From positions 62,001 to 126,000 of the IMG/VR virus record IMGVR_UViG_3300046665_000548: DNA of 64,000 bases; one strand, written 5' to 3'. Positions 3,694 through 47,194 of the stretch are shown here, in pieces (the stretch's first letter is position 1; every line of letters begins with the position of its first letter). The position numbers and the translations under genes are program-made. Below the pieces are notes generated by a model, which searched no databases, was not told the DNA's origin, and worked only from the letters and a program-made list of their open reading frames with translations.

Positions 3694-5072
3694 AACTGCA
3701 TAACTCTCTATCAGGCCAAGTCGAACAGTTCATTCCACAGGACCCTAATCAGGTGACGATGTACGTCTGTGGTCCAACGGTTTATGACACCCCTCATGTC
3801 GGCAACGCGCGACCTTTGGTGGTCTTCGATCTCTTGTATCGCCTGCTCGGTGACGAGTTCGCGGCAATCAAGTATGCCCGAAACATTACGGACATTGACG
3901 ACAAGATCATGGATCGCGCCAAAGCGAACGGCGAAGACATTGGCGCGCTGACGCAACGCACGACCGCTGACTATCACGACATTGCGAAAATCTTGGGCTG
4001 CATTCCACCAACGCACGAGCCTCGGGCGACACACAATGTCGATGCCATGCAGGGCATGATTGGCAAGCTGATCCACACGGGCTATGCCTATGAGGCCGAA
4101 GGTCATGTGCTGTTCGACAGCGCCAAGCGCGGCAACGTGTACCCTCTCACGGGTCACGATCCAGACAATTTGCGCGAAGGTCATCGAATTGAGGTAGCTT
4201 CGTATAAGCGTAACGGAGCGGATTTCGTTCTGTGGAAGCCTTCGGAACCCGAGCAGCCAGGATGGGCCAGCCCGTGGGGACGAGGACGGCCGGGCTGGCA
4301 CATCGAATGCTCAGCTATGATCCAAGAGTTGTTGGGCGTCACGATTGACATCCACGGCGGCGGTAATGATTTGCGCTTTCCTCACCACGAAGCAGAGATC
4401 GCTCAATCTGAGTGCACGCATCAAGCTCCGCTCGCTCGCTATTGGGTGCACAACGGGATGTTGCTGCTCAACGGCAAGAAGATGGCCAAGAGTACCGGGA
4501 ATTTCTTTACGGTGCGTCAAATTCTCGATGGCACCGCCTTCGGTCAGAAATTTACCGGGCAGGAGGTCAGGCTTGCCCTTTTGCAGACCCACTATCGGCA
4601 TCCTCTCGATCTGACACTGGCCTCGCTCGACAATGCACGTAAGAGCTTGGACCGTTGGTTTGGTGCTCTCCTGTCGCATCGTGAGTGGTGGCATAGTCGC
4701 GCGTCGTATCCGGAACCAAATATGGTTATGGATTCTCTTCGTGACGACATGAACACGCCGGAAGCGATCATGCATCTTCACGAGATAGCAACGCGCATCA
4801 ACCGCGATCAGAACCACCCTGGGGCAGACGTGCGCGCTATGGTCCGCGCATGCTCCGCTATGGGATTGCTGCCGAACGTTACCCATCCGAAGGCAAATCT
4901 CCTGACGCCGGAAGCCAAAGCGTTGCTCAACAATCGGCTTGCGGCTCGGAAGTACGGCGACTATAGGCAGGCGGACAAAATTCGCGACGAGCTTCGTTCC
5001 AAAGCCTCTATTGAGGTGAAGGACACGAAAGCTGGTCAGCTTTGGTACTATTCTGGAGAATCAATCGCATGA
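3690..5072 (+). CDS. cysS: Cysteine--tRNA ligase
   Basis: MYVCGPTVYD, HVGN (HIGH motif), DFVLWK, GRPGWHIECSAM, DIHGGGNDLRFPHHEAE, KMAKS (KMSKS motif). Confidence 0.97.
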   Translation: MKLHNSLSGQVEQFIPQDPNQVTMYVCGPTVYDTPHVGNARPLVVFDLLYRLLGDEFAAIKYARNITDIDDKIMDRAKANGEDIGALTQRTTADYHDIAKILGCIPPTHEPRATHNVDAMQGMIGKLIHTGYAYEAEGHVLFDSAKRGNVYPLTGHDPDNLREGHRIEVASYKRNGADFVLWKPSEPEQPGWASPWGRGRPGWHIECSAMIQELLGVTIDIHGGGNDLRFPHHEAEIAQSECTHQAPLARYWVHNGMLLLNGKKMAKSTGNFFTVRQILDGTAFGQKFTGQEVRLALLQTHYRHPLDLTLASLDNARKSLDRWFGALLSHREWWHSRASYPEPNMVMDSLRDDMNTPEAIMHLHEIATRINRDQNHPGADVRAMVRACSAMGLLPNVTHPKANLLTPEAKALLNNRLAARKYGDYRQADKIRDELRSKASIEVKDTKAGQLWYYSGESIA

Positions 5073-17860: not shown

Positions 17861-18623
17861 CGTCGGGCTCGATCACGTCGCCATCAAACTGGCCACTGCC
17901 CTCAGCGAACGCTTCACCAACGGTTTCGTTGGATAAGATCGCCTGTGGCTTTCCGTTGTTGACGTAAATGATCGCCTCGTATGCTACTACCATTGTGAAT
18001 AGCCCAATCCCGCTGTCTTCGTACGAAAGATCGTCCGCATCAAAGCTAGTTATTTTAGGATTGATGATGTCGAATTGAATGAACTTGCCGCCGAAGACCT
18101 GATACACCGAAATAGTGTCAAAGAAGAATTGGACGTTCTCTTCCATTTCACTCTGAGATGCCCGACGTGGCGCGAAGCCGAAGCCGAAACCATCCTCAGT
18201 GGCTGTATCTCGATATTCGTCAGCCATAACATCCCAGCGGAAATCGTCGCGAGCTTTATCGTGACGAAAGTCTCCGAAATAGTGCTGCGCGTAGTCGTTC
18301 CACATCTGACCGGCTGTGTTGTCAACAGTGTCGTAGAACGTCACTTTCATCTGTTGCAATTTGTAGCCAGTGTATACTTGACGCTTCTTATTATACTGGT
18401 TGAGTTCCTGAACCTCAGGTGTCACACCTGGGCGATCAACCGCTTTAACGCGATAGCTAAGGTCACGCTGCCACGTACGCTGACTAGCTTGAGATGCGGC
18501 TGTATCGTTGCCGCGTCTAAAGTTGACATAGAAAAGATTCTTCGGCCTGGGAGCGGCAGGACCGTCCAGACCGAAGATTCTACTAGCTTGATGTGGTGTC
18601 CGAAGAAACCGCGTCAATGACAT
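17847..18623 (-). CDS. Tail tube-like/baseplate tube initiator (gp54/gp19-like)
   Basis: VKAVDRP..ELNQYNKKR..VTFYDT..NPKITSFDADDLSY tube-fold pattern. Confidence 0.7.
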   Translation of the reverse strand: MSLTRFLRTPHQASRIFGLDGPAAPRPKNLFYVNFRRGNDTAASQASQRTWQRDLSYRVKAVDRPGVTPEVQELNQYNKKRQVYTGYKLQQMKVTFYDTVDNTAGQMWNDYAQHYFGDFRHDKARDDFRWDVMADEYRDTATEDGFGFGFAPRRASQSEMEENVQFFFDTISVYQVFGGKFIQFDIINPKITSFDADDLSYEDSGIGLFTMVVAYEAIIYVNNGKPQAILSNETVGEAFAEGSGQFDGDVIEPDDGTP

Positions 18624-18627
18624 CAGA

Positions 18628-19209
18628 TTACATCATTGGTCCGGAGAGCAATTCCGGGTTCTCAGGCATCAGGCCACCAAGCTGCGTTGCGTTGTCGTAA
18701 CGAACAGACATTTGGATGGTCATTGGCTCAGCAGAACCGTAATCGAAACCGTCGTAGTTGATGCTTTCAAGGAAGCAGTTTTCCAGATACCACTGCTCAA
18801 GAACGCCATCGTTACCGCCGTCAAGCGTTTCGATGTACATTTCGAACTTGTAGTTCGAACCAGCGAGCGGAGAGGTCTGCTCGAAATGGTTCATCTGCTT
18901 CTGCTCTTGGTGACCGATCAGCTTAGCAACAGCGTTCGTAACGTCGTCACGAACTGAAAGCTCAACTGGCGACCACTCAGCCTTGCCTGCGTAGTAAGCG
19001 ATGCTGTTGTAGGAATCGACCTTAACAGCGCCCTGGCTACGGGACGGACGGCTGACGTGCATAACCTGTTGTGTGAGTTCAAGACCGCCTGCAATCGGAC
19101 CGAACTTGAAGACGCGTACGCGGAAGCGATGCTTTGGCTTTGGCTGAAGAATGCCACCGCGTCCAGCACCACCTCCCAAAGGTACGCCAAAATTCTGTAA
19201 TGTGCCCAA
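18628..19209 (-). CDS. Tail tube protein (gp19-like), TTG start
   Basis: LQPKPKHRFRV..RPS..YYAGKAEWSPVELSVRDD..W.LENCF..YDNA; AGGAG RBS and TAAATA promoter. Confidence 0.85.
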   Translation of the reverse strand: MGTLQNFGVPLGGGAGRGGILQPKPKHRFRVRVFKFGPIAGGLELTQQVMHVSRPSRSQGAVKVDSYNSIAYYAGKAEWSPVELSVRDDVTNAVAKLIGHQEQKQMNHFEQTSPLAGSNYKFEMYIETLDGGNDGVLEQWYLENCFLESINYDGFDYGSAEPMTIQMSVRYDNATQLGGLMPENPELLSGPMM

Positions 19210-19352
19210 GGACTTAGCTCCTTTTGTTAATGTTATTGTTGAGCATAAATTTGAGCTTCTAGCTCGCGTTCAACTCCCTACAAGTATTTAGCGGAAGTTG
19301 ATCTATTCGGTTATTATACGAGTATAAATAGGCATGAATACATTGCAAAACT

Positions 19353-20084
19353 TTGGAGTTACTTTTGGACTACTACGTATACTTGTTGCTTGATCCCAGG
19401 AATTATTGCATCCCATTTTATGTTGGTAAGGGAAGAGGGGATCGAGCAAAGGCTCATCTCCAAGAAAACAGGATGTCGGAGAATCCGCGCAAGGCGGCAA
19501 AAATTAGAAAAATCAGAGCGGCGGGATTGGAGCCACTTATCCAGTATTGGCAAACTGGGATGGAAGAAGACGCGGCTTATCAACTTGAAGAGCTACTGAT
19601 AGCCCGGTTCGGAAGAGCTAAAATCGACACTGATGGAATTCTTACAAACCTCCTTGCCGATGCTCGACCGCCAAGTGCATTGGGACGATCTCCATCAGAG
19701 GAAACCCGAAAAATTTTAAGTGAGCGACAACTCGGTGATCTAAATCATCGTTTTGGAAAGCGTTGGACCGAAGAACAAAACCAGTCTCGATCAGCTTGGA
19801 ACAAAGCAAACGGCATCAAACCTCCTGTACGCTCGGGACCGATGTCTGACGAACAGAAGGCAGCAATCGGCAACGGCAATCGTGGGAAGAAGCGTTCAGA
19901 AGAGGTTTGCGCAAAGCTTAGTCAACAGCGCAAGGGTCGTAGTCACAAACCGCCGACTGAAGAGACAAAGCGTAAAATCAGCGAGGCGCAAAAAGGCGTA
20001 CCTCGCCGCAAGATGACTCCTGAAGAAAAAATTGCTCATTCAGAACGCGTGAAGCTTGCTTGGGCGAGGCGTAAGGGTCTCTAA
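19353..20084 (+). CDS. GIY-YIG (LEM-3-like) homing endonuclease with NUMOD3-type repeats; true start uncertain
   Basis: YYVYLLLDPR..FYVGKG..R..H, E..LI, LTN; repeated SEETRKILS/TEETKRKISEA motifs. Confidence 0.85.
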   Translation: MELLLDYYVYLLLDPRNYCIPFYVGKGRGDRAKAHLQENRMSENPRKAAKIRKIRAAGLEPLIQYWQTGMEEDAAYQLEELLIARFGRAKIDTDGILTNLLADARPPSALGRSPSEETRKILSERQLGDLNHRFGKRWTEEQNQSRSAWNKANGIKPPVRSGPMSDEQKAAIGNGNRGKKRSEEVCAKLSQQRKGRSHKPPTEETKRKISEAQKGVPRRKMTPEEKIAHSERVKLAWARRKGL

Positions 20085-20329
20085 TGGCTCAAATTCTCGA
20101 ATTACCATTCGAGGTGATCTATGACCCGTATCACTCCGGCCGACATTTCGCTTTGAAGGCGGAAATTGTTGAATGGTGCTACGCCAATCTCCAAGGACAT
20201 TACGAAGTTGAGTATGTCCGCGAAAACGTGAAGATGAAGAAGGGTCGTGTGCATTCATACACGATGAGCTTCTTCGGTGTATTTATGGATGAGAACGACG
20301 CCTTGCTGTTCAAGCTGCGCTGGCTATAA
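20084..20329 (+). CDS. FKLRW-family small protein
   Basis: EIVEWC...FMDENDALLFKLRWL. Confidence 0.7.
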   Translation: MAQILELPFEVIYDPYHSGRHFALKAEIVEWCYANLQGHYEVEYVRENVKMKKGRVHSYTMSFFGVFMDENDALLFKLRWL

Positions 20330-20336
20330 ATAGTCG

Positions 20337-21209
20337 ATGCGATATCATGAATTACTTGGTTTAGACGAAAACGTTGTTTTGGATGAAATGCCAGTTGCTC
20401 ACTATCAGACAGTGGGCAACTTTGATAAGGCGTCCTCGTTCAAACATGAGGATGACAGAAAAATCCTGACGAACCCGAAAGCGATTGCAAAGCTTCATAA
20501 GAAATTTGCGAACAATCGTTTCGATTTCAATATGTTCTTCGTGAACGTTCCGGGTATGGGTAAACACCTGGAGACCGGTGTTGTGGATGCCGAATGGATT
20601 CAGCAGAACATGCCCAAAGTCTGGCCTGAAATTCAACAGAACCTCAGCAACAATTCAATCAATATCATTTTCACAAACAACAGCGCGACGCCTCGTTATC
20701 CTATGACGGCTTGGATCATCGCTCATAGATTTGGCCACGCAGTTGACCGATATAATAAGGGCAAGAAAACGTTCGATGATATTCGCAGAACATGCACGGA
20801 TTACGCTGAACAAATCCTCCAGATATACAACACAAAGCTTCCAGCGGAACAACGATATGGCTACGGATATAACCAACCGGCCAAAGGTGCTCCAACTCGC
20901 ACGAAAACCTTGCACAATCTGTGGAAACAAATCGGCGGCATGAAGTCTGCCAGAGATGGCACACTCCGAGACGAGTACGAGTTCTACCACGAAATGTGTG
21001 CGGAATATCTGATTACGGGCGAGATCAAACTCCGTCCAATTGAAGGCGGTCTGATCACAGGATATTCCTATGGCCGACCACAGACGAGGCACTGCGCCCC
21101 CGGCGACCAGCAGTATCTCAACAGCCTTATCAATGACCTTGGCGAGACGTTGACCAACGAATACGAGAACGTCGTATCGTCAATGGTTGGTAGCATTCTC
21201 GTGATGTAA
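20337..21209 (+). CDS. Late tagged protein with a degenerate zincin-like motif
   Basis: TATAAATA 4 nt upstream; MRYHELLGLDE; WIIAHRFGHA and downstream EFYHEMCAEY. Confidence 0.6.
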   Translation: MRYHELLGLDENVVLDEMPVAHYQTVGNFDKASSFKHEDDRKILTNPKAIAKLHKKFANNRFDFNMFFVNVPGMGKHLETGVVDAEWIQQNMPKVWPEIQQNLSNNSINIIFTNNSATPRYPMTAWIIAHRFGHAVDRYNKGKKTFDDIRRTCTDYAEQILQIYNTKLPAEQRYGYGYNQPAKGAPTRTKTLHNLWKQIGGMKSARDGTLRDEYEFYHEMCAEYLITGEIKLRPIEGGLITGYSYGRPQTRHCAPGDQQYLNSLINDLGETLTNEYENVVSSMVGSILVM

Positions 21210-21277
21210 AAAAAAGGCCGCCCTCAAGGCGGCCCAAGTCAAGGGAGGAAACGCCCATCGCGCGTCGCGATGGAACG
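21208..21277 (-). ncRNA. suhB/MmgR-type alphaproteobacterial small RNA
   Basis: Minus strand: hairpin, then GGGCGTTTCCTCCCTTGACTT, then GGGCCGCC-TTGA-GGGCGGCC and T8; TTGACA-N17-TAAAAG promoter at 21311-21283. Confidence 0.75.
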
Positions 21278-21329
21278 GCCATCTTTTATGTCGATTTCCC
21301 CGTGGTGTCAAATAAATTCGTAATTTGGT

Positions 21330-21593
21330 TCAGCCGTCGAAGACATTTTCCAGCCCGGCTAGAATCGACATCCACTTTTCCTTGGAATTGTAATCCGATC
21401 TAATCTTCGTGCCGCCCTCCATCGAGAATTCGATGTAGTAGTTGTTCGGGCCATAGCGCCAGGATCGAATACCCAACAGTCTTGACCGTCTGATCCTGAG
21501 ATGAATAAGACCTTTGAACCTGATGATGATCGCATCGAATTTCAATTCAACCGTTGCTTCATCGTTTGAAGTAGGTTCTGTAGCTGAGTCCAT
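21330..21593 (-). CDS. Hypothetical protein
   Basis: AAGGA RBS. Confidence 0.6.
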   Translation of the reverse strand: MDSATEPTSNDEATVELKFDAIIIRFKGLIHLRIRRSRLLGIRSWRYGPNNYYIEFSMEGGTKIRSDYNSKEKWMSILAGLENVFDG

Positions 21594-21900
21594 CTGTATT
21601 CCTTATTCGAAAATGAAAAGTGTAGCGGGGCTGGTTTGATCAGAACCATCCGAAGTTTCACCCCCAGGGCTTAGGTTACCCACCCGCTACGACCTAACTA
21701 CCGTTGTGCCAAGGTAAAATCCTGGACACTTGCACGCGCCGCCATGCCACAGGCGGAATACCTTTACGCGACTCTAGCGCACGCCTCCCAGTCACCCACG
21801 TGCAAGTTATATGGGTTCAGGACCTGAGTCCTCTTACGGTGCCAGCCTAAGCTGACTTGCTCAATATAGCCAGCAACGTTGGTCACACCAATATATTAGA

Positions 21901-22137
21901 TCAATTGCTGAACGCGATTCTGAACATGGTGGCAATAGATGCCCCAGTTAGCTCGACCGTGTATCCAGGACCTGCTGCATAGTTGTCCAACAGTATACAT
22001 GGCCAGATCGCGTGGCTTCCCAACGCATTTTCTTTAAGCCATTCTGTTACTTCGTTTTGATCTATCTCTTCATTGGAAATTTTGAAGCGATAGACCGACT
22101 CTTCAGGGGTCAAATTTATGAATGCAATAACCTTCAT
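21901..22137 (-). CDS. FKLRW-family small protein
   Basis: EVTEWL...ATMFRIAFS; TAAATA 7 nt upstream. Confidence 0.6.
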   Translation of the reverse strand: MKVIAFINLTPEESVYRFKISNEEIDQNEVTEWLKENALGSHAIWPCILLDNYAAGPGYTVELTGASIATMFRIAFSN

Positions 22138-22165
22138 CGGCCGATATTTAGTCCCTCAGAAACGA

Positions 22166-22193
22166 AAAAGGCGGCCCGAAGGCCGCCTTTTTG
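22166..22193. terminator. Bidirectional intrinsic terminator after the tail sheath gene
   Basis: AAAAGGCGGCC-CGAA-GGCCGCCTTTT. Confidence 0.8.
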
Positions 22194-22216
22194 AACATGA
22201 TGTTCACGTTTTGTTC

Positions 22217-25153
22217 TTAGACGCTGCTCTGCTGATTACCCGAGCCACGAGCGGTCGGGAAAGTCATGGCGGCGGCCGAGGAGAGAACACGAACCGGCAC
22301 GTAGATGAATTCGATGGCCTTGATCGGCTTGATCAGGATATCGACCCACAGTTCGTTGCGGTCGCGGCGCTCAGGGGTGTTATTCGATTCGTCGCAGAGA
22401 ACCGCAAAGTCCTCAAGAGCGCGAAGAGTAATAAGACCGGTGAGGAAGCGTTCGGTAACCAACTTGGCCGAATCACGAGTCTGCTGATCGTTCTGTTCGA
22501 AGAGGAACGGCTTCATCAGAAGGTCGAGATTGAACTTCAGGTAGTTCGCGAGACGCGCGACGTTTACGCGGTTGAGTGCGCTATCAAGCGGGTGAAGCGT
22601 CTTCTGACCGTACACGACCAGACCACGGTTTGCGATGAACGCAATCGGGTTGATCTTGTTGAGGTACAGAACGTCGCGCTGGCCCTGGTTGAGGTGAACA
22701 GGCTTGTACTCGTTCTCGCTGGTGAGATAACCGACGCTGGTAGCGTTGGATACCATACCGCGCTGGAAACCAGCCGGAGCGAACCATGGGTAAGCCACCT
22801 GATCGTTGTACGCGTAGGTGCGCAGAGCGATTGTGGACGGCGGAACCATGATCTCGAAACCATCGAGGTTAGTCGAGAGACCCCAAGGGTAGTAAAGACC
22901 CGTGTAGGTCGGAGACGTAACACTCGCGAGACCTTCGTCACCCGGCGAGACGGCCAATTTGGCGTTGGTTGCCCAATCCTGAACCGCAGTGCCGTTCGGC
23001 TTAAGGCGAGCCGGAGTATCACCGATGATGAAGCTGACCTCCTTCTGATCCAGATTGAGGGTGCCCATCTCATCCATCAGTTCCGGATAACCAGGAGCAG
23101 CGATGAGATTGTAGTAGATGACCTCAGAGCGAACGTCTTCGTTTGCAGTGACGACAGCCTGCATTGCACGGACAATCATCTGACGTTGTGCCTTGCGGCC
23201 CATCCAAGGAGCGCCGTCGTAACGGTTTCCAGAGGCGGTTACCCAACGGCCGAGGGTGTCAACTGGCGGCATGAGGTAGTTGTCCTCACCGACAGAGTAC
23301 GATGTCTGGCCGTAGTTGGTCTCAGGATCAAAGTGACCTTCCTTGAAGTAGTTTGGCTGCCATTCCTTGACGTTGTAGGTCGAGAAGCGGGTGTTGAAGA
23401 GCAGCATGCCGTCTGGGTGTACCAGAGCCTGAGGAGCATCTGGATCAACGTAGTCGGACACGAGCATGTCAGACATCAACTCAGAGAATGCTGTGCTGTG
23501 ACCGAGCGCTTCACCGTTGTCGTCCATCGTTGGGCCAGCGTTTTCGCGGGCGTCAGCAAAGACGATACCGAACGGGGTAGTCTGGTCAGTCAGATCAACG
23601 CGCTTCCAACGAAGAGAGGTCTCGTCGTAACGGTACAGAGCCGGATAGTTTTCGAGATCAGACGTATCGATCCAGAGATCGTAGTCAACCAGCGCGGTAT
23701 CGTCGCTCTGGGTGATCGGTTCTGAACCGGAGAGAATGACGCCCTTCGGATCGGTCGAAGGATAGCGCTTGCGGTAACCCTGCCAAATCTGACCAGTGCC
23801 GACCATGACATCGACGTGGAAATCTGCATTGTACCAGAGAGTACCTTCTTCTGGGTCCTGCGACGGAGGAACAGCGGAAGCGACGTAGGTCAGGTCTGTC
23901 CACATCGTGCCATCCCAGCGACGAAGCACCTGGACGCCCGTGGATGGATCGAACGCGACGTAAACGTTACCAACGCTTGGAACACCAAGAGTGAAGGCGC
24001 GCAGGTCCTTGTTGGTGTCGCCGTCATTGAGAGTCGAGTCGTAAACGAAGAACGGAGCGGTGCGAACTGTCCACTGCTGAGTTGTAGCAGAGTAGACCTT
24101 CACATCCCACTTAGCGCCACGGTTCGGGCTGGTGCCCTTGATCCAAACGTCACCGGAGGCAGAACCAGCCGGGTACTGAGCGTCGGAGGTGCGAACAATG
24201 CGGTTGCCCTTGGTCGTTCCAGCGGTGATACCGAGGACCGTAAGCGGCGTTCCGGTTACGTTGGCGATTGCGATGTCACCACCGGCAGTGTTCGTGAGAA
24301 CAAGACGATTGTTGCTGATCGCAGCAGTGAGGCTTGGAACAGCAGCGGCGGTGATGTCCGTGACAACGTTCGCCAGAGTACCGGTGCCGGTCGAGAACGT
24401 GACCGTGTGCGGACCGTTGCCGGTGTTGATGCTGATCGAGTTGCCGACAGTAACGCTGGCAGGAGAGACGGAACCAGACACCACGGTTGGACGAGCGGCC
24501 TTCCAGCCCGTGCTACCCAGAGCGTACCAAGAACCTGCGATCTTTTCGTAGAACTTGTTGTCGTGAGTTGCGACCACAACTGCGTAGTCACCGTCAAGAC
24601 CGTAGCCGGGCTTCGGAACGTAGGCACTGTTGACGAGAACCGTATCGGTTTCGTATGCAACGCGAACACGCTTGTGGACCCATGCAGCGCCTGCAATCAG
24701 GTTACCATTCGACTTGAACAGACCCCATTCGGTTGTGCTGGTGTCGAGCCAGTAAGTGCCAGGAGCCGGAGGAGCAGTCGGTGCCAGATTTGCGTGTGCA
24801 AGCTGAGCAAGATCGATGTCAGCGCGCAGGATGTAGGCACGGTTCGCAATACCCAGATACGAGTAAGCGGCGTGAAGACCGTATTCGTTCAGTTCCGAAC
24901 CATGCAGCGGCGTGCCTTCCAGCGTCTGGAAGGTTGGGTTGCCGTAGTTCTGCACGAGATCGCGCTGGCTTGTGGCGAGGTAGAGCGGGTTAGCAACAGG
25001 CGAAGTCAGAGGGGCGTAATCCGTGCCTCCTGGCGTCAGCTTGTTGTTGGCAGTCGCGATCACGATCAGAGGGACAGTACCGGGTCCCGCACCACCGTAG
25101 AACGACTGGTCGAGAATTTGTACGTCTACGCCGGGCGAGACTAGAATTGTCAT
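22217..25153 (-). CDS. Tail sheath protein (gp18-like) with large insertion domains
   Basis: LVSPGV N-terminus; PWFAPAG..RG, RDVLY..KINPI, YGQKTL, RVNVARL, FEQND, IKPIKAIEFIY. Confidence 0.95.
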   Translation of the reverse strand: MTILVSPGVDVQILDQSFYGGAGPGTVPLIVIATANNKLTPGGTDYAPLTSPVANPLYLATSQRDLVQNYGNPTFQTLEGTPLHGSELNEYGLHAAYSYLGIANRAYILRADIDLAQLAHANLAPTAPPAPGTYWLDTSTTEWGLFKSNGNLIAGAAWVHKRVRVAYETDTVLVNSAYVPKPGYGLDGDYAVVVATHDNKFYEKIAGSWYALGSTGWKAARPTVVSGSVSPASVTVGNSISINTGNGPHTVTFSTGTGTLANVVTDITAAAVPSLTAAISNNRLVLTNTAGGDIAIANVTGTPLTVLGITAGTTKGNRIVRTSDAQYPAGSASGDVWIKGTSPNRGAKWDVKVYSATTQQWTVRTAPFFVYDSTLNDGDTNKDLRAFTLGVPSVGNVYVAFDPSTGVQVLRRWDGTMWTDLTYVASAVPPSQDPEEGTLWYNADFHVDVMVGTGQIWQGYRKRYPSTDPKGVILSGSEPITQSDDTALVDYDLWIDTSDLENYPALYRYDETSLRWKRVDLTDQTTPFGIVFADARENAGPTMDDNGEALGHSTAFSELMSDMLVSDYVDPDAPQALVHPDGMLLFNTRFSTYNVKEWQPNYFKEGHFDPETNYGQTSYSVGEDNYLMPPVDTLGRWVTASGNRYDGAPWMGRKAQRQMIVRAMQAVVTANEDVRSEVIYYNLIAAPGYPELMDEMGTLNLDQKEVSFIIGDTPARLKPNGTAVQDWATNAKLAVSPGDEGLASVTSPTYTGLYYPWGLSTNLDGFEIMVPPSTIALRTYAYNDQVAYPWFAPAGFQRGMVSNATSVGYLTSENEYKPVHLNQGQRDVLYLNKINPIAFIANRGLVVYGQKTLHPLDSALNRVNVARLANYLKFNLDLLMKPFLFEQNDQQTRDSAKLVTERFLTGLITLRALEDFAVLCDESNNTPERRDRNELWVDILIKPIKAIEFIYVPVRVLSSAAAMTFPTARGSGNQQSSV

Positions 25154-46441: not shown

Positions 46442-46516
46442 GCGAATGTAATTCAGTGGTAGAATGCCTCGTTGCCAACGAGGTCGCCGTGGGTTCGAGC
46501 CCCACCGTTCGCTCCA
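46442..46516 (+). tRNA. tRNA-Gly(GCC)
   Basis: Cloverleaf; anticodon arm CCTCG-TTGCCAA-CGAGG; GGTTCGA; encoded CCA. Confidence 0.92.
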
Positions 46517-46533
46517 GTCAGAAAGTTGTTTGT

Positions 46534-46610
46534 CGCGGGGTGGAGCAGCCCGGTAGCTCGTTAGGCTCATAACCTAAAGGTCGGTGGTTCAAATCCATCT
46601 CCCGCAACCA
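46534..46610 (+). tRNA. Initiator tRNA-fMet(CAT)
   Basis: CGCGGGG start with C1:A72 mismatch; TTAGG-CTCATAA-CCTAA; CCA end. Confidence 0.92.
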
Positions 46611-46655
46611 AACATTGAAAGAAATTGCCGACCTCAAAGGGTTGGCCAAGAGTGA

Positions 46656-46732
46656 CGCGGGATGGAGCAGTCAGGTAGCTCGTCGGGTTCATATCCCGGA
46701 GGTCGGTGGATCGAAGCCATCTCCCGCAACCA
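46656..46732 (+). tRNA. Second, variant initiator-type tRNA-Met(CAT)
   Basis: CGCGGGA start; TCGGG-TTCATAT-CCCGG; T-loop ATCGAAG; CCA end. Confidence 0.85.
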
Positions 46733-46766
46733 TTAAACGGTCTCCTTGTCCCGATAGACAGGAAAT

Positions 46767-46842
46767 GGGGCCTTAGCTCAGTTGAGAGAGCGATTCGCTG
46801 GCAGTGAATAGGTCGTCAGTTTGATCCTGACAGGCTCCACCA
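46767..46842 (+). tRNA. tRNA-Ala(GGC)
   Basis: G3:U70 pair; loop CTGGCAG; atypical T-loop TTTGATC; CCA end. Confidence 0.85.
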
Positions 46843-46850
46843 CATAGTTC

Positions 46851-46925
46851 GGGCTAGTAGTTCAGCGGGAGAACGTTGCCTTTGCAAGGCAAATGTCGGG
46901 GGTTCAATTCCCTCCTGGTCCACCA
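46851..46925 (+). tRNA. tRNA-Ala(TGC)
   Basis: G3:U70 pair; TTGCC-TTTGCAA-GGCAA; CCA end. Confidence 0.88.
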
Positions 46926-47118
46926 CACTGCGCCTGTTTGACCTTCGGGAAGACAGGCTTTTATTACGGATGAGACCGGTTTACACCTACGGGGCCAAAC
47001 CGGGCCAATCTCACCGTAAGGCCCCTGGGGCTTAGTCCAGGCGCGGCCGGAGCGAAATCCGGTAGAGGGCTGCACGGGACGCCGGATAGTCTGCGGAGGG
47101 GTGGGAACCCCTTCCAAT

Positions 47119-47194
47119 GCGAACGTAGCTCAGTTGGTAGAGCGTCTGATTTCCAATCAGAATGTCGTGAGTTCGAATCTCATCGTTCGCTCCA
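47119..47194 (+). tRNA. tRNA-Gly(TCC)
   Basis: TCTGA-TTTCCAA-TCAGA; GTTCGAAT; CCA end. Confidence 0.92.

What the first reader, a model, noticed from the sequence alone, without database searches (positions are those of the whole stretch)
21208..21311. Phage-borne suhB/MmgR-type host regulatory sRNA with its own sigma70 promoter
Seen: a compact minus-strand unit of TTGACA-N17-TAAAAG, a 5' hairpin, single-stranded TTTCCTCCCT (anti-Shine-Dalgarno) and a GC terminator. Known: this is the architecture of alphaproteobacterial suhB/MmgR sRNAs, and MmgR limits PHB accumulation in Sinorhizobium. Inference: the phage redirects host carbon storage or silences SD-led mRNAs. It also supports an alphaproteobacterial host.
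Basis: partly seen in the sequence, partly recalled or inferred. Interest (0 to 1): 0.65.

Follow-up and report, generated by a model that had tools for sequence, protein, structure and literature searches.

The report
Giant phage carries host-type regulatory RNA
A 608-kb phage of soil Alphaproteobacteria carries its own copy of the host's alphaR8 (MmgR/SisA) small regulatory RNA, with a remodelled front half and a promoter lacking the host's control motif, so it probably lets the phage take over a host carbon and transport switch.

Summary
Window 21311..21208 (minus strand) holds TTGACA-N17-TAAAAG, a stable 5' hairpin, an exposed UUUCCUCCCU 10-mer and a 9-bp terminator with U8. Rfam RF00519 (suhB/mmgR, the alphaR8 family) matches 21286..21201 end to end at 42.8 bits (cut-off 41). 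It is the only copy in a 607,744-bp virus record.

The phage belongs to the jumbo myovirus clade of Agrobacterium phage Atu_ph07 and Sinorhizobium phage Phosso. It also encodes an alphaproteobacterial permuted tmRNA, so an alphaproteobacterial host is independently supported.

The gene sits like a moron in a hypervariable slot between the tail sheath and tail tube genes. Ten related huge phages lack it. At least two ~10%-diverged strains in other metagenomes keep it while its neighbours change.

Homology to bacterial copies covers only seed, linker and terminator. The promoter and hairpin are unique, and the promoter lacks the dyad typical of host mmgR promoters. The genome has no integrase and no Hfq.

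Other phages, including public records, carry unannotated alphaR8 genes.

No RNA data exist. The proposed function, mimicking host alphaR8 to repress host mRNAs, is inferred.

The parts
21306..21311 (-). -35 box TTGACA, preceded by an AT-rich stretch at about 21327-21312
   Evidence: Read directly from the sequence. TTGACA-N17-TAnnnn occurs only 8 times in the whole genome.
21283..21288 (-). -10 box TAAAAG with a 17-nt spacer. The predicted start site is near 21276, giving an RNA of about 69 nt.
   Evidence: The consensus scan did not flag it because it lacks the final T. The spacer has no host-type GTGC-N3-6-GCAnC dyad.
21252..21277 (-). Stable 5' hairpin (8-bp GC-rich core, ACG loop, up to 3 outer pairs). 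It replaces the weak CCUCC-loop hairpin of canonical alphaR8 RNAs.
   Evidence: Folds. The Rfam alignment shows a 21-nt insert where the model has 7. No similarity to about 240 sampled bacterial and IMG/VR copies.
21242..21251 (-). Invariant alphaR8 10-mer UUUCCUCCCU (anti-Shine-Dalgarno seed)
   Evidence: Exact match to the Rfam consensus. Predicted unpaired with probability 0.94-0.98 for any plausible start site.
21236..21241 (-). Linker UGACUU, the U variant that the scan found in Hyphomicrobiales and other Alphaproteobacteria
21208..21235 (-). Rho-independent terminator: 9-bp stem (7 G-C), 3-nt loop and U8 tail, which is also the likely Hfq-binding module
   Evidence: Terminator scan and folds
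21201..21286 (-). Extent of the Rfam RF00519 (suhB/mmgR) match, model positions 1-77
   Evidence: 42.8 bits against a gathering score of 41
21330..21593 (-). Upstream same-strand 87-aa ORF, whose stop lies 18 nt before the -35 box. Its transcript would end at the sRNA terminator.
   Evidence: No Pfam or PHROG family. The Atlas model resembles small viral proteins at TM 0.78 and is not Hfq-like.
20337..21209 (+). Convergent 290-aa ORF whose TAA stop abuts the terminator. In one related strain a different sequence takes its place.
   Evidence: The X3 contig replaces 20332-21226 with 679 other bases.
19353..20084 (+). GIY-YIG/NUMOD3 homing endonuclease in the same variable slot, absent from related strains
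   Evidence: Pfam and PHROG hits. The X2 and X3 contigs skip it.
22217..25153 (-). Tail sheath gene, the conserved upstream border of the variable slot. It has its own terminator at about 22190-22160.
   Evidence: Pfam Phage_sheath_1C, 46-63% identity in relatives, sequence
18628..19209 (-). Tail tube gene, the conserved downstream border of the variable slot
   Evidence: phrog_4542 tail tube protein, E 1.5e-57, 48-79% identity in relatives

Best explanation
This is a real, phage-borne member of the alphaR8 (MmgR/SisA, Rfam suhB) family of Hfq-dependent small RNAs, carried as a self-contained moron between the tail sheath and tail tube genes of a 608-kb jumbo myovirus that infects Alphaproteobacteria, probably soil Hyphomicrobiales.

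Shown here: the family-defining 3' module (exposed 10-mer, linker, Rho-independent terminator with a long U tail) is intact. A host-type -35/-10 pair sits at the correct distance. The gene is kept in diverged strains while its neighbours change.

Inferred mechanism: host RNA polymerase transcribes an RNA of about 69 nt. Host Hfq binds its terminator and U tail, since the phage has no hfq. The 10-mer then pairs with the ribosome-binding regions of the host mRNAs that the host's own alphaR8 RNAs control. In Caulobacter these encode TonB-dependent receptors, transporters and carbon-metabolism genes; in Sinorhizobium the output is phasin and PHB control.

The phage promoter lacks the dyad found in about half of the sampled host mmgR promoters, and the weak 5' hairpin is replaced by a stable one. 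The phage copy should therefore be expressed independently of host carbon/nitrogen signalling and be long-lived. That would lock the infected cell into an alphaR8-high, 'fed' state and possibly lower surface receptors.
For: - **Family match:** RF00519 hits full length above the cut-off, and it is the only copy in the genome.
- **Seed:** identical to the consensus and predicted 94-98% unpaired, at least as exposed as in 108 bacterial copies at 0.88.
- **Terminator:** 9 bp plus U8.
- **Promoter:** TTGACA-N17-TAAAAG has the same layout as Methylocystis mmgR promoters, TTGACA-N17-TATAAC, and this promoter form is rare in the phage (8 sites).
- **Accessory position:** conserved sheath and tube genes border the slot, none of its contents occur in relatives, and the gap ranges from about 160 nt to 4.4 kb.
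- **Absent from relatives:** none of 10 related huge phages, including Atu_ph07 and Phosso, has it.
- **Retained in strains:** contigs about 10% diverged from two other studies cover promoter, hairpin and seed. They lack the homing endonuclease, and one has a different downstream gene.
- **Not an att site, no own chaperone:** no integrase, resolvase or Hfq in the genome.
- **No self-targeting signal:** seed-complement sites are not enriched in the phage genome, 2 against about 1 expected.
- **Host dyad missing:** 63 of 116 bacterial promoters have it, the phage has none, and shuffled controls give 1.3%.
- **Recurrence:** alphaR8 genes above the cut-off occur inside other phage genomes.
- **Published family function:** PMC12559287, PMC7143759 and PMC8401924.
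Against: - No transcript evidence: no RNA run holds the locus.
- The Rfam score is only 1.8 bits above the cut-off.
- The -10 box lacks the conserved final T and fails the consensus scan.
- The canonical CCUCC-loop hairpin and the three-stem-loop layout are missing.
- The host species, and therefore the actual targets, are unknown.
- Retention in related strains was read from contig coordinates only, so sequence-level conservation or covariation of the hairpin could not be checked.
- I derived the dyad motif from alignments; it is not taken from the primary paper.
Confidence: 0.6

Rival explanations
1. It is a captured host fragment that now serves only as a transcription terminator. The 3' part of a bacterial mmgR gene was picked up and is kept because it terminates the upstream 87-aa gene's transcript, and the seed has no role in the phage.
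For: Homology to bacterial copies is limited to the 3' module. The element lies directly after a same-strand ORF. One other phage copy lies right after a coat gene (L025). No expression data exist.
Against: A perfect -35 box and a 4-of-6 -10 box sit at the right distance although this promoter form is rare in the genome. A terminator does not need the 10-mer and linker, yet both are intact and fully exposed. Promoter, hairpin and seed are retained in diverged strains.
Confidence: 0.15
2. It acts as a decoy rather than a repressor. By presenting the same 10-mer, it titrates a host sponge RNA of the CrfA type, or competes for Hfq, and so protects or displaces the host's own alphaR8 RNAs.
For: In Caulobacter, CrfA pairs with exactly this 10-mer and triggers decay of SisA (PMC12559287). 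The stable 5' hairpin and U8 tail would suit a long-lived Hfq ligand.
Against: No host is known, so no sponge can be examined. The net outcome, high alphaR8 activity, overlaps with the main explanation rather than excluding it.
Confidence: 0.1
3. It regulates the phage's own mRNAs, for example timing late genes by masking their ribosome-binding sites.
For: It has an anti-SD seed and lies among late structural genes.
Against: Exact seed complements number 2 in the genome, one of which is the gene's own antisense strand, against 0-1 in simulations. Only 4 of 30 one-mismatch sites precede an ORF.
Confidence: 0.07
4. It is an attP-type recombination site: a copy of the host mmgR 3' end used for integration into that gene.
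For: mmgR is used as a prophage attachment site elsewhere. In L088/L027 a canonical mmgR with a replaced terminator lies about 1 kb from a tyrosine integrase. Identity to host copies is confined to the 3' module.
Against: The 607-kb genome has no tyrosine or serine recombinase. Its cultured relatives are jumbo myoviruses deposited as phage records. No recombinase gene is adjacent. The promoter would be left unexplained.
Confidence: 0.04
5. It is a chance resemblance or an assembly chimera with host DNA.
For: The Rfam score is marginal. Contigs in other runs break at the element because bacterial copies share 48 nt with it.
Against: Long contigs in two other studies run from the sheath gene through promoter, hairpin and seed. 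A 23-nt exact identity to bacterial copies cannot arise by chance in 0.6 Mb. Phage genes lie on both sides.
Confidence: 0.02

Closest known systems
MmgR of Sinorhizobium meliloti (alphaR8 family, Rfam RF00519 suhB)
   Same: Same invariant single-stranded 10-mer, linker and Rho-independent terminator. Sigma-70-type promoter. Passes the Rfam cut-off.
   Different: The phage RNA is about 69 nt with two stem-loops rather than 77 nt with three. It has no CCUCC-loop hairpin and no dyad between -35 and -10 for NtrC/AniA control. It is not next to an N-formylglutamate amidohydrolase gene and is encoded by a virus.
SisA-D of Caulobacter crescentus (alphaR8 siblings; PMC12559287)
   Same: Same seed and terminator module. 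As with the siblings, the promoter and 5' part are unrelated to other copies. The proven mechanism, seed pairing at the RBS of TonB-dependent receptor and transporter mRNAs with Hfq, is the model for how this RNA would work.
   Different: The siblings are chromosomal and under host control. No CrfA-type sponge or target set can be assigned here because the host is unknown.
Unannotated alphaR8 genes in other phage genomes (Bradyrhizobium phage ppBeUSDA76-1 OP596613.1:16066-16146; 'Microcystis' phage Mwe-JY08 PP395640.1:42319-42402; IMG/VR contigs behind L025, L051, L071, L102)
   Same: RF00519 hits above the cut-off that lie between phage genes. Several also replace the canonical 5' part.
   Different: Those are 16-45 kb genomes or contigs, mostly of temperate type, and the two public records keep the canonical three-stem form at 62.8 bits. 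The present copy is in a 608-kb jumbo myovirus with no integrase, scores lower and has a remodelled 5' half.
Phage- and prophage-encoded Hfq-dependent sRNAs of enterobacteria (lambda PreS, DicF, AgvB/AsxR; review PMC12197685)
   Same: Short trans-acting RNAs made by a phage that act on host gene expression through Hfq.
   Different: As described in that review, those are either repressors with their own target sites or anti-sRNA sponges. None is presented there as a copy of a core host sRNA family. The present RNA carries the host family's own seed, so it is a mimic, not an antagonist.
Morons of tailed phages (my own knowledge: an accessory gene with its own promoter and terminator inserted between conserved genes)
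   Same: It has its own promoter and terminator, lies between the conserved sheath and tube genes, is absent from relatives, and its neighbours vary between strains.
   Different: The cargo is a regulatory RNA rather than a protein.

Membership tests
alphaR8 / MmgR / Rfam RF00519 (suhB) | Covariance-model score at or above the curated gathering score (41 bits) over the full model | tested here: met
   42.8 bits, model positions 1-77, E 1.8e-5 for the window. The margin is small.
alphaR8 / MmgR / Rfam RF00519 (suhB) | Internal single-stranded 10-mer 5'-UUUCCUCCCU-3' (PMC12559287) | tested here: met
   Exact 10-mer at 21251-21242, unpaired probability 0.94-0.98
alphaR8 / MmgR / Rfam RF00519 (suhB) | Rho-independent terminator shortly after the 10-mer | tested here: met
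   9-bp stem, 7 G-C pairs, U8 at 21235-21208, six bases after the seed
alphaR8 / MmgR / Rfam RF00519 (suhB) | Weak hairpin directly upstream of the 10-mer (in the Rfam consensus a 3-bp stem with a 7-nt loop; the loop reads CUCCUU-like in the bacterial copies) | tested here: not met
   A hairpin is present at the right place, but it is a stable 8-11 bp stem with a 3-nt loop and no CCUCC motif. The Rfam alignment shows a 21-nt insert in place of the 7-nt loop.
alphaR8 / MmgR / Rfam RF00519 (suhB) | Three stem-loops and about 77 nt, as described for MmgR (PMC7143759) | tested here: not met
   Two stem-loops and about 69 nt from the predicted start. Several other phage-borne copies are also remodelled.
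alphaR8 / MmgR / Rfam RF00519 (suhB) | Linkage to an N-formylglutamate amidohydrolase gene (holds for the ancestral chromosomal copy only; paralogues lack it) | tested here: not met
   The neighbours are phage genes and ORFs with no family match
alphaR8 / MmgR / Rfam RF00519 (suhB) | Host-type promoter control: a dyad between -35 and -10 for NtrC/AniA (PMC8401924) | tested here: not met
   GTGC-N3-6-GCAnC is present in 63 of 116 bacterial copies, 1.3% of shuffled controls, and absent from the phage promoter. I inferred the motif from alignments.
alphaR8 / MmgR / Rfam RF00519 (suhB) | Occurrence in Alphaproteobacteria (here, that the host is one) | tested here: met
   Closest cultured relatives infect Agrobacterium and Sinorhizobium. 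The phage has an alpha-type permuted tmRNA. The seed-linker variant was found only in alphaproteobacterial genomes.
alphaR8 / MmgR / Rfam RF00519 (suhB) | Hfq-dependent, discrete small transcript | not testable with these tools
   No RNA run holds the locus, and the phage has no hfq of its own
Phage moron | Own promoter and terminator, inserted between conserved genes, absent from relatives | tested here: met
   Promoter activity itself is untested.
attP site of a temperate phage | A recombinase encoded in the genome, usually next to the site | tested here: not met
   No PF00589 or PF00239 match in 607,744 bp, and the neighbours are not recombinases
Anti-sRNA / sponge RNAs (AgvB, AsxR, CrfA type) | Sequence complementary to the seed of a host sRNA | tested here: not met
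   The RNA carries the alphaR8 seed itself, not its complement. Whether it titrates a CrfA-type sponge cannot be tested without the host.

The most novel reading that the evidence does not exclude
Phages of Alphaproteobacteria, from 40-kb temperate phages to a 608-kb jumbo phage, have repeatedly captured the seed-plus-terminator module of the host's alphaR8 sRNA and rebuilt its promoter and 5' end. That would make phage-encoded alphaR8 mimics a general 'auxiliary regulatory RNA' strategy. The phage would seize the host's feast/famine post-transcriptional switch, free of NtrC/AniA control, to keep metabolism in a fed state. It might also lower TonB-dependent receptors, which could block superinfection. 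Use of mmgR as a prophage attachment site would be the route of capture.
Probability: 0.35. Interest if true: 0.8.

Novelty: new variant of a known kind. Interest (0 to 1): 0.6.

Why it matters
Auxiliary metabolic genes of phages are well known, but auxiliary regulatory RNAs copied from a core host sRNA family are not. I found no paper describing a phage-borne alphaR8/MmgR, yet such genes sit unannotated in public phage genomes.

The alphaR8 family now has a proven mechanism and validated targets in Caulobacter, and a clear phenotype in Sinorhizobium. The idea is therefore directly testable with existing reporters, and Bradyrhizobium phage ppBeUSDA76-1 is on record with its host strain, Bradyrhizobium elkanii USDA 76.

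If true, phages would be shown to rewire host post-transcriptional networks by mimicry, not only through proteins or anti-sRNAs. The element also gives a practical host-prediction marker for uncultured huge phages.

Tried and rejected
- **Close relatives of the locus:** megablast and blastn against 50,697 phage records found no close relative.
- **The 290-aa neighbour:** it has no relatives in IMG/VR by pattern search.
- **Related huge phages:** RF00519 hits in ten of them were all below the cut-off, and inspection showed only terminators.
- **Phage-specific hairpin-seed junction:** a pattern scan found nothing in IMG/VR. The four JGI metagenome hits were ordinary bacterial copies, so no sequences were obtained for covariation analysis of the 5' hairpin.
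- **Expression:** only five DNA runs hold parts of the stretch, and no RNA run does.
- **Devosiaceae long-hairpin copies:** I considered them architectural precedents, but they do not reach the RF00519 cut-off, so I do not use them as family members.
- **Caulobacter jumbo-phage blast hits:** chance matches inside ORFs with E about 4.
- **ORF-free 300 nt at 21600-21900:** no Rfam hit, no tRNA, fold z-score -1.2.
- **Flanking ORFs:** the Atlas look-alikes gave no RNA-chaperone link. The 87-aa protein resembles small viral proteins. The 290-aa protein has only viral hypothetical relatives and sub-threshold hints of metalloprotease-like families.
- **Primary papers:** Lagares 2016 and 2017 are not held, so I cannot say whether they mention phage-borne copies.
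Full report
**What is there**

On the minus strand the window reads, in order:
- an AT-rich stretch;
- TTGACA at 21311-21306;
- a 17-nt spacer;
- TAAAAG at 21288-21283;
- a GC-rich hairpin at about 21277-21252;
- the 10-mer UUUCCUCCCU at 21251-21242;
- the linker UGACUU;
- a 9-bp stem-loop at 21235-21215;
- eight U ending at 21208.

The terminator scan lists the stem-loop. Folding leaves the 10-mer unpaired in both the minimum-energy and centroid structures. Its unpaired probability is 0.94-0.98 for any start site 5-9 nt after the -10 box, against 0.88 ± 0.14 in 108 bacterial homologues. The promoter scan does not list the promoter because the -10 lacks the final T, so the match is 10 of 12 positions.

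**Family test**

Rfam RF00519 (suhB, described there as mmgR) matches 21286-21201 over model positions 1-77. The score is 42.8 bits against a gathering score of 41, and this is the only match in the whole 607,744-bp record. In the alignment, the segment from GGCG through the 10-mer and linker into the terminator is identical or compatible with the consensus. The one large departure is a 21-nt insert where the model has a 7-nt loop. All other Rfam families score far below their cut-offs at this site.

**What the genome is**

The window is positions 62001-126000 of an IMG/VR virus record that CheckV rates as complete. The locus lies between a tail sheath gene (Pfam Phage_sheath_1C) and a tail tube gene (phrog_4542). 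By sheath protein, the closest cultured phages are Agrobacterium phage Atu_ph07 (490 kb, 49% identity) and Sinorhizobium phage Phosso (469 kb, 47.6%). IMG/VR holds further relatives of 457-578 kb.

A full Rfam scan of the genome found about 52 tRNAs, a GOLLD RNA and a permuted tmRNA that also matches the alphaproteobacterial tmRNA model. No other sRNA family was found. An alphaproteobacterial host is therefore supported by evidence that does not depend on the sRNA.

**Local anatomy**

Sheath and tube are conserved in all relatives examined, at 46-63% and 48-79% identity. Nothing in the 3 kb between them has a counterpart in those relatives. The slot holds:
- a 78-aa ORF;
- a 300-nt ORF-free stretch;
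- an 87-aa ORF;
- the sRNA;
- a convergent 290-aa ORF;
- an 81-aa ORF;
- a GIY-YIG homing endonuclease.

The sheath-tube gap ranges from about 160 nt to 4.4 kb across the clade. The sheath gene has its own terminator. The sRNA is thus a self-contained unit with its own promoter and terminator in a hypervariable slot, which is the layout of a moron. None of ten related huge-phage genomes, Atu_ph07 and Phosso included, has an RF00519 hit above 23 bits. The weak hits are plain terminators.

**Independent samples**

No RNA run holds the locus. Contigs from DNA runs of three studies, one labelled soil metagenome, were laid on 18500-24400.
- A 26.5-kb contig (X2) and a 33.7-kb contig (X3), each about 10% diverged, run from the sheath gene down to 21229 and 21226. 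They therefore cover promoter, hairpin and seed.
- A second X2 contig covers 20968-21257.
- Both strains lack the homing endonuclease.
- In X3 the 290-aa ORF is replaced by 679 unrelated bases, and the hairpin loop has a 2-nt deletion.
- Short, deep contigs match only 21208/21210-21257 and then continue into host-type sequence. These are bacterial mmgR genes in the same samples, and they explain why assemblies break at this point.

The element is therefore kept while its surroundings turn over. I could not see the letters of those contigs, so this is retention by coordinates and not a sequence-level test.

**Relation to bacterial copies**

All were Alphaproteobacteria and nearly all Hyphomicrobiales: Methylocystis, Methylosinus, Methylocapsa, Methylocella, Rhodoblastus, Pelagibacterium, Devosia, Methylobacterium and others. 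The scan stopped at its limit, so this is not a full census.

Canonical copies have a first stem-loop, then a weak hairpin with a CCUCC-like loop, then the 10-mer and the terminator. The phage copy shares only the part from GGGCG onward. Its promoter and hairpin align to none of about 240 sampled copies, with a best score of 11.5 out of 60.

Host promoters of the Methylocystis type have the same TTGACA-N17 layout but carry a dyad in the spacer. The literature places NtrC/AniA control of mmgR at a dyad between -35 and -10 (PMC8401924). A GTGC-N3-6-GCAnC dyad occurs upstream of 63 of 116 bacterial copies and in 1.3% of shuffled controls. It is absent from the phage promoter and from the other phage-borne copies checked. 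The exact motif is my inference.

**How it most likely works**

The following is established for the family.
- MmgR is Hfq-dependent and limits PHB and phasin accumulation (PMC7143759 and PMC8401924).
- SisA of Caulobacter uses the 10-mer to pair just upstream of start codons. It represses a regulon rich in TonB-dependent receptors, transporters and metabolic genes, as proven by compensatory mutation.
- The starvation RNA CrfA sponges the same 10-mer (PMC12559287).

The following is shown here: an intact, exposed seed, a strong terminator with U8, a host-type promoter without the host dyad, a stabilising 5' hairpin, no phage hfq and no enrichment of seed-complement sites in the phage genome.

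The rest is inferred. The phage makes a long-lived alphaR8 mimic that uses host Hfq, and it imposes the alphaR8-high state on the infected cell regardless of host carbon and nitrogen signals. Lowering of surface receptors is a further possible benefit. I put 0.6 on this mechanism and about 0.85 on the narrower claim that this is a true alphaR8-derived sRNA gene.

**Rivals**

- **Terminator only (0.15):** fits the 3'-limited homology, but leaves the promoter and the intact seed unexplained.
- **Decoy for a sponge or for Hfq (0.10):** compatible with the data and overlaps with the main model.
- **Self-regulation (0.07):** not supported by the site counts.
- **attP (0.04):** considered seriously, because mmgR is a prophage attachment site elsewhere. 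This genome, however, has no recombinase.
- **Chance or chimera (0.02):** excluded by long contigs from other studies and by the exact identity.

**Wider pattern**

More than 120 IMG/VR contigs contain the core motif. Most are canonical host-type genes, often at contig edges. Several non-canonical copies, however, lie between phage genes and pass the Rfam cut-off:
- L025, directly after a P22-type coat gene, 48.6 bits;
- L071, in a RusA/helicase/primase module, 44.3 bits;
- L102, next to an ORF with pectate-lyase-type and beta-helix domains (possibly a tailspike), 47.0 bits;
- L051, two tandem copies, 56.5 and 43.2 bits.

A seed module between terminase and portal genes (L095/L077) is below the cut-off.

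Among public phage records, Bradyrhizobium phage ppBeUSDA76-1 and 'Microcystis' phage Mwe-JY08 each carry an unannotated hit of 62.8 bits. Bradyrhizobium phages BDU-MI-1 and ppBdUSDA122-1 carry sub-threshold copies.

**Novelty**

I found no paper describing a phage-borne alphaR8. The primary phylogeny paper, which reports lateral transfer of the family, is not held. I therefore rate this a new variant of a known kind: a known RNA family in a new carrier, with a remodelled 5' half and promoter.

The read-laying run used 5,901 letters. Only genetic code 11 was used.

Noticed in passing
L358:10908-11433 (genome 336,908-337,433, + strand; outside the window): GOLLD RNA (Rfam RF02032) at 188.3 bits against a cut-off of 150 in this megaphage, with tRNA genes about 6 kb downstream.
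   Followed up: no
L370:10371-10748 (genome 576,371-576,748, + strand; outside the window): Phage-encoded permuted tmRNA (RF04321, 102.5 bits) that also matches the alphaproteobacterial tmRNA model (RF01849, 65.1 bits). This is an independent pointer to the host class.
   Followed up: partly
window 46442-47191 and many loci of the genome: Six tRNA genes in the window and about 52 in the whole genome, in several clusters.
   Followed up: no
window 19353-20084 (+): GIY-YIG/NUMOD3 homing endonuclease between the tail tube gene and the sRNA slot. Contigs of related strains in two studies skip exactly this gene, so it is a presence/absence polymorphism.
   Followed up: partly
L088:10810 with integrase at L088:11832-13109 (-); the same in L027; L030:175: Canonical bacterial mmgR genes whose terminator is replaced just after the linker. 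One lies next to a tyrosine integrase and one next to a large terminase gene. mmgR appears to serve as a prophage attachment site in some Alphaproteobacteria.
   Followed up: partly
PP395640.1:42319-42402 (L375/L378): A phage recorded as infecting the cyanobacterium Microcystis carries a 62.8-bit alphaR8 gene, a family otherwise restricted to Alphaproteobacteria. Either the true host is an associated alphaproteobacterium or the gene was transferred.
   Followed up: no
OP596613.1:16066-16146 (L373/L377): Bradyrhizobium phage ppBeUSDA76-1 has an unannotated canonical alphaR8 gene (62.8 bits) just upstream of its HNH endonuclease and terminase genes. ppBdUSDA122-1 has a decayed copy at the same place (32 bits, 1-nt deletion in the linker).
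   Followed up: partly
L051:4703-4776 and 4889-4968 (-): Two tandem alphaR8 genes (43.2 and 56.5 bits) in one IMG/VR contig, near a PcfJ-like gene.
   Followed up: no
window 21600-21900 (-): A 300-nt stretch without an ORF of 50 aa or more, between the 78-aa and 87-aa ORFs. It has no Rfam hit and no tRNA, and its fold is no better than shuffles (z -1.2).
   Followed up: yes
L210:10140-11795 and L211:11624-13288: In Atu_ph07 and Phosso the same sheath-tube slot holds a gene annotated as a Ro-like RNA-binding protein. The slot therefore carries RNA-related cargo in several members of the clade.
   Followed up: no
window 20337-21209 (+): The 290-aa ORF convergent on the sRNA has only viral hypothetical relatives, plus sub-threshold feature hits (scores under 0.9) to zinc-metalloprotease-like families. 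A different sequence replaces it in one related strain.
   Followed up: partly
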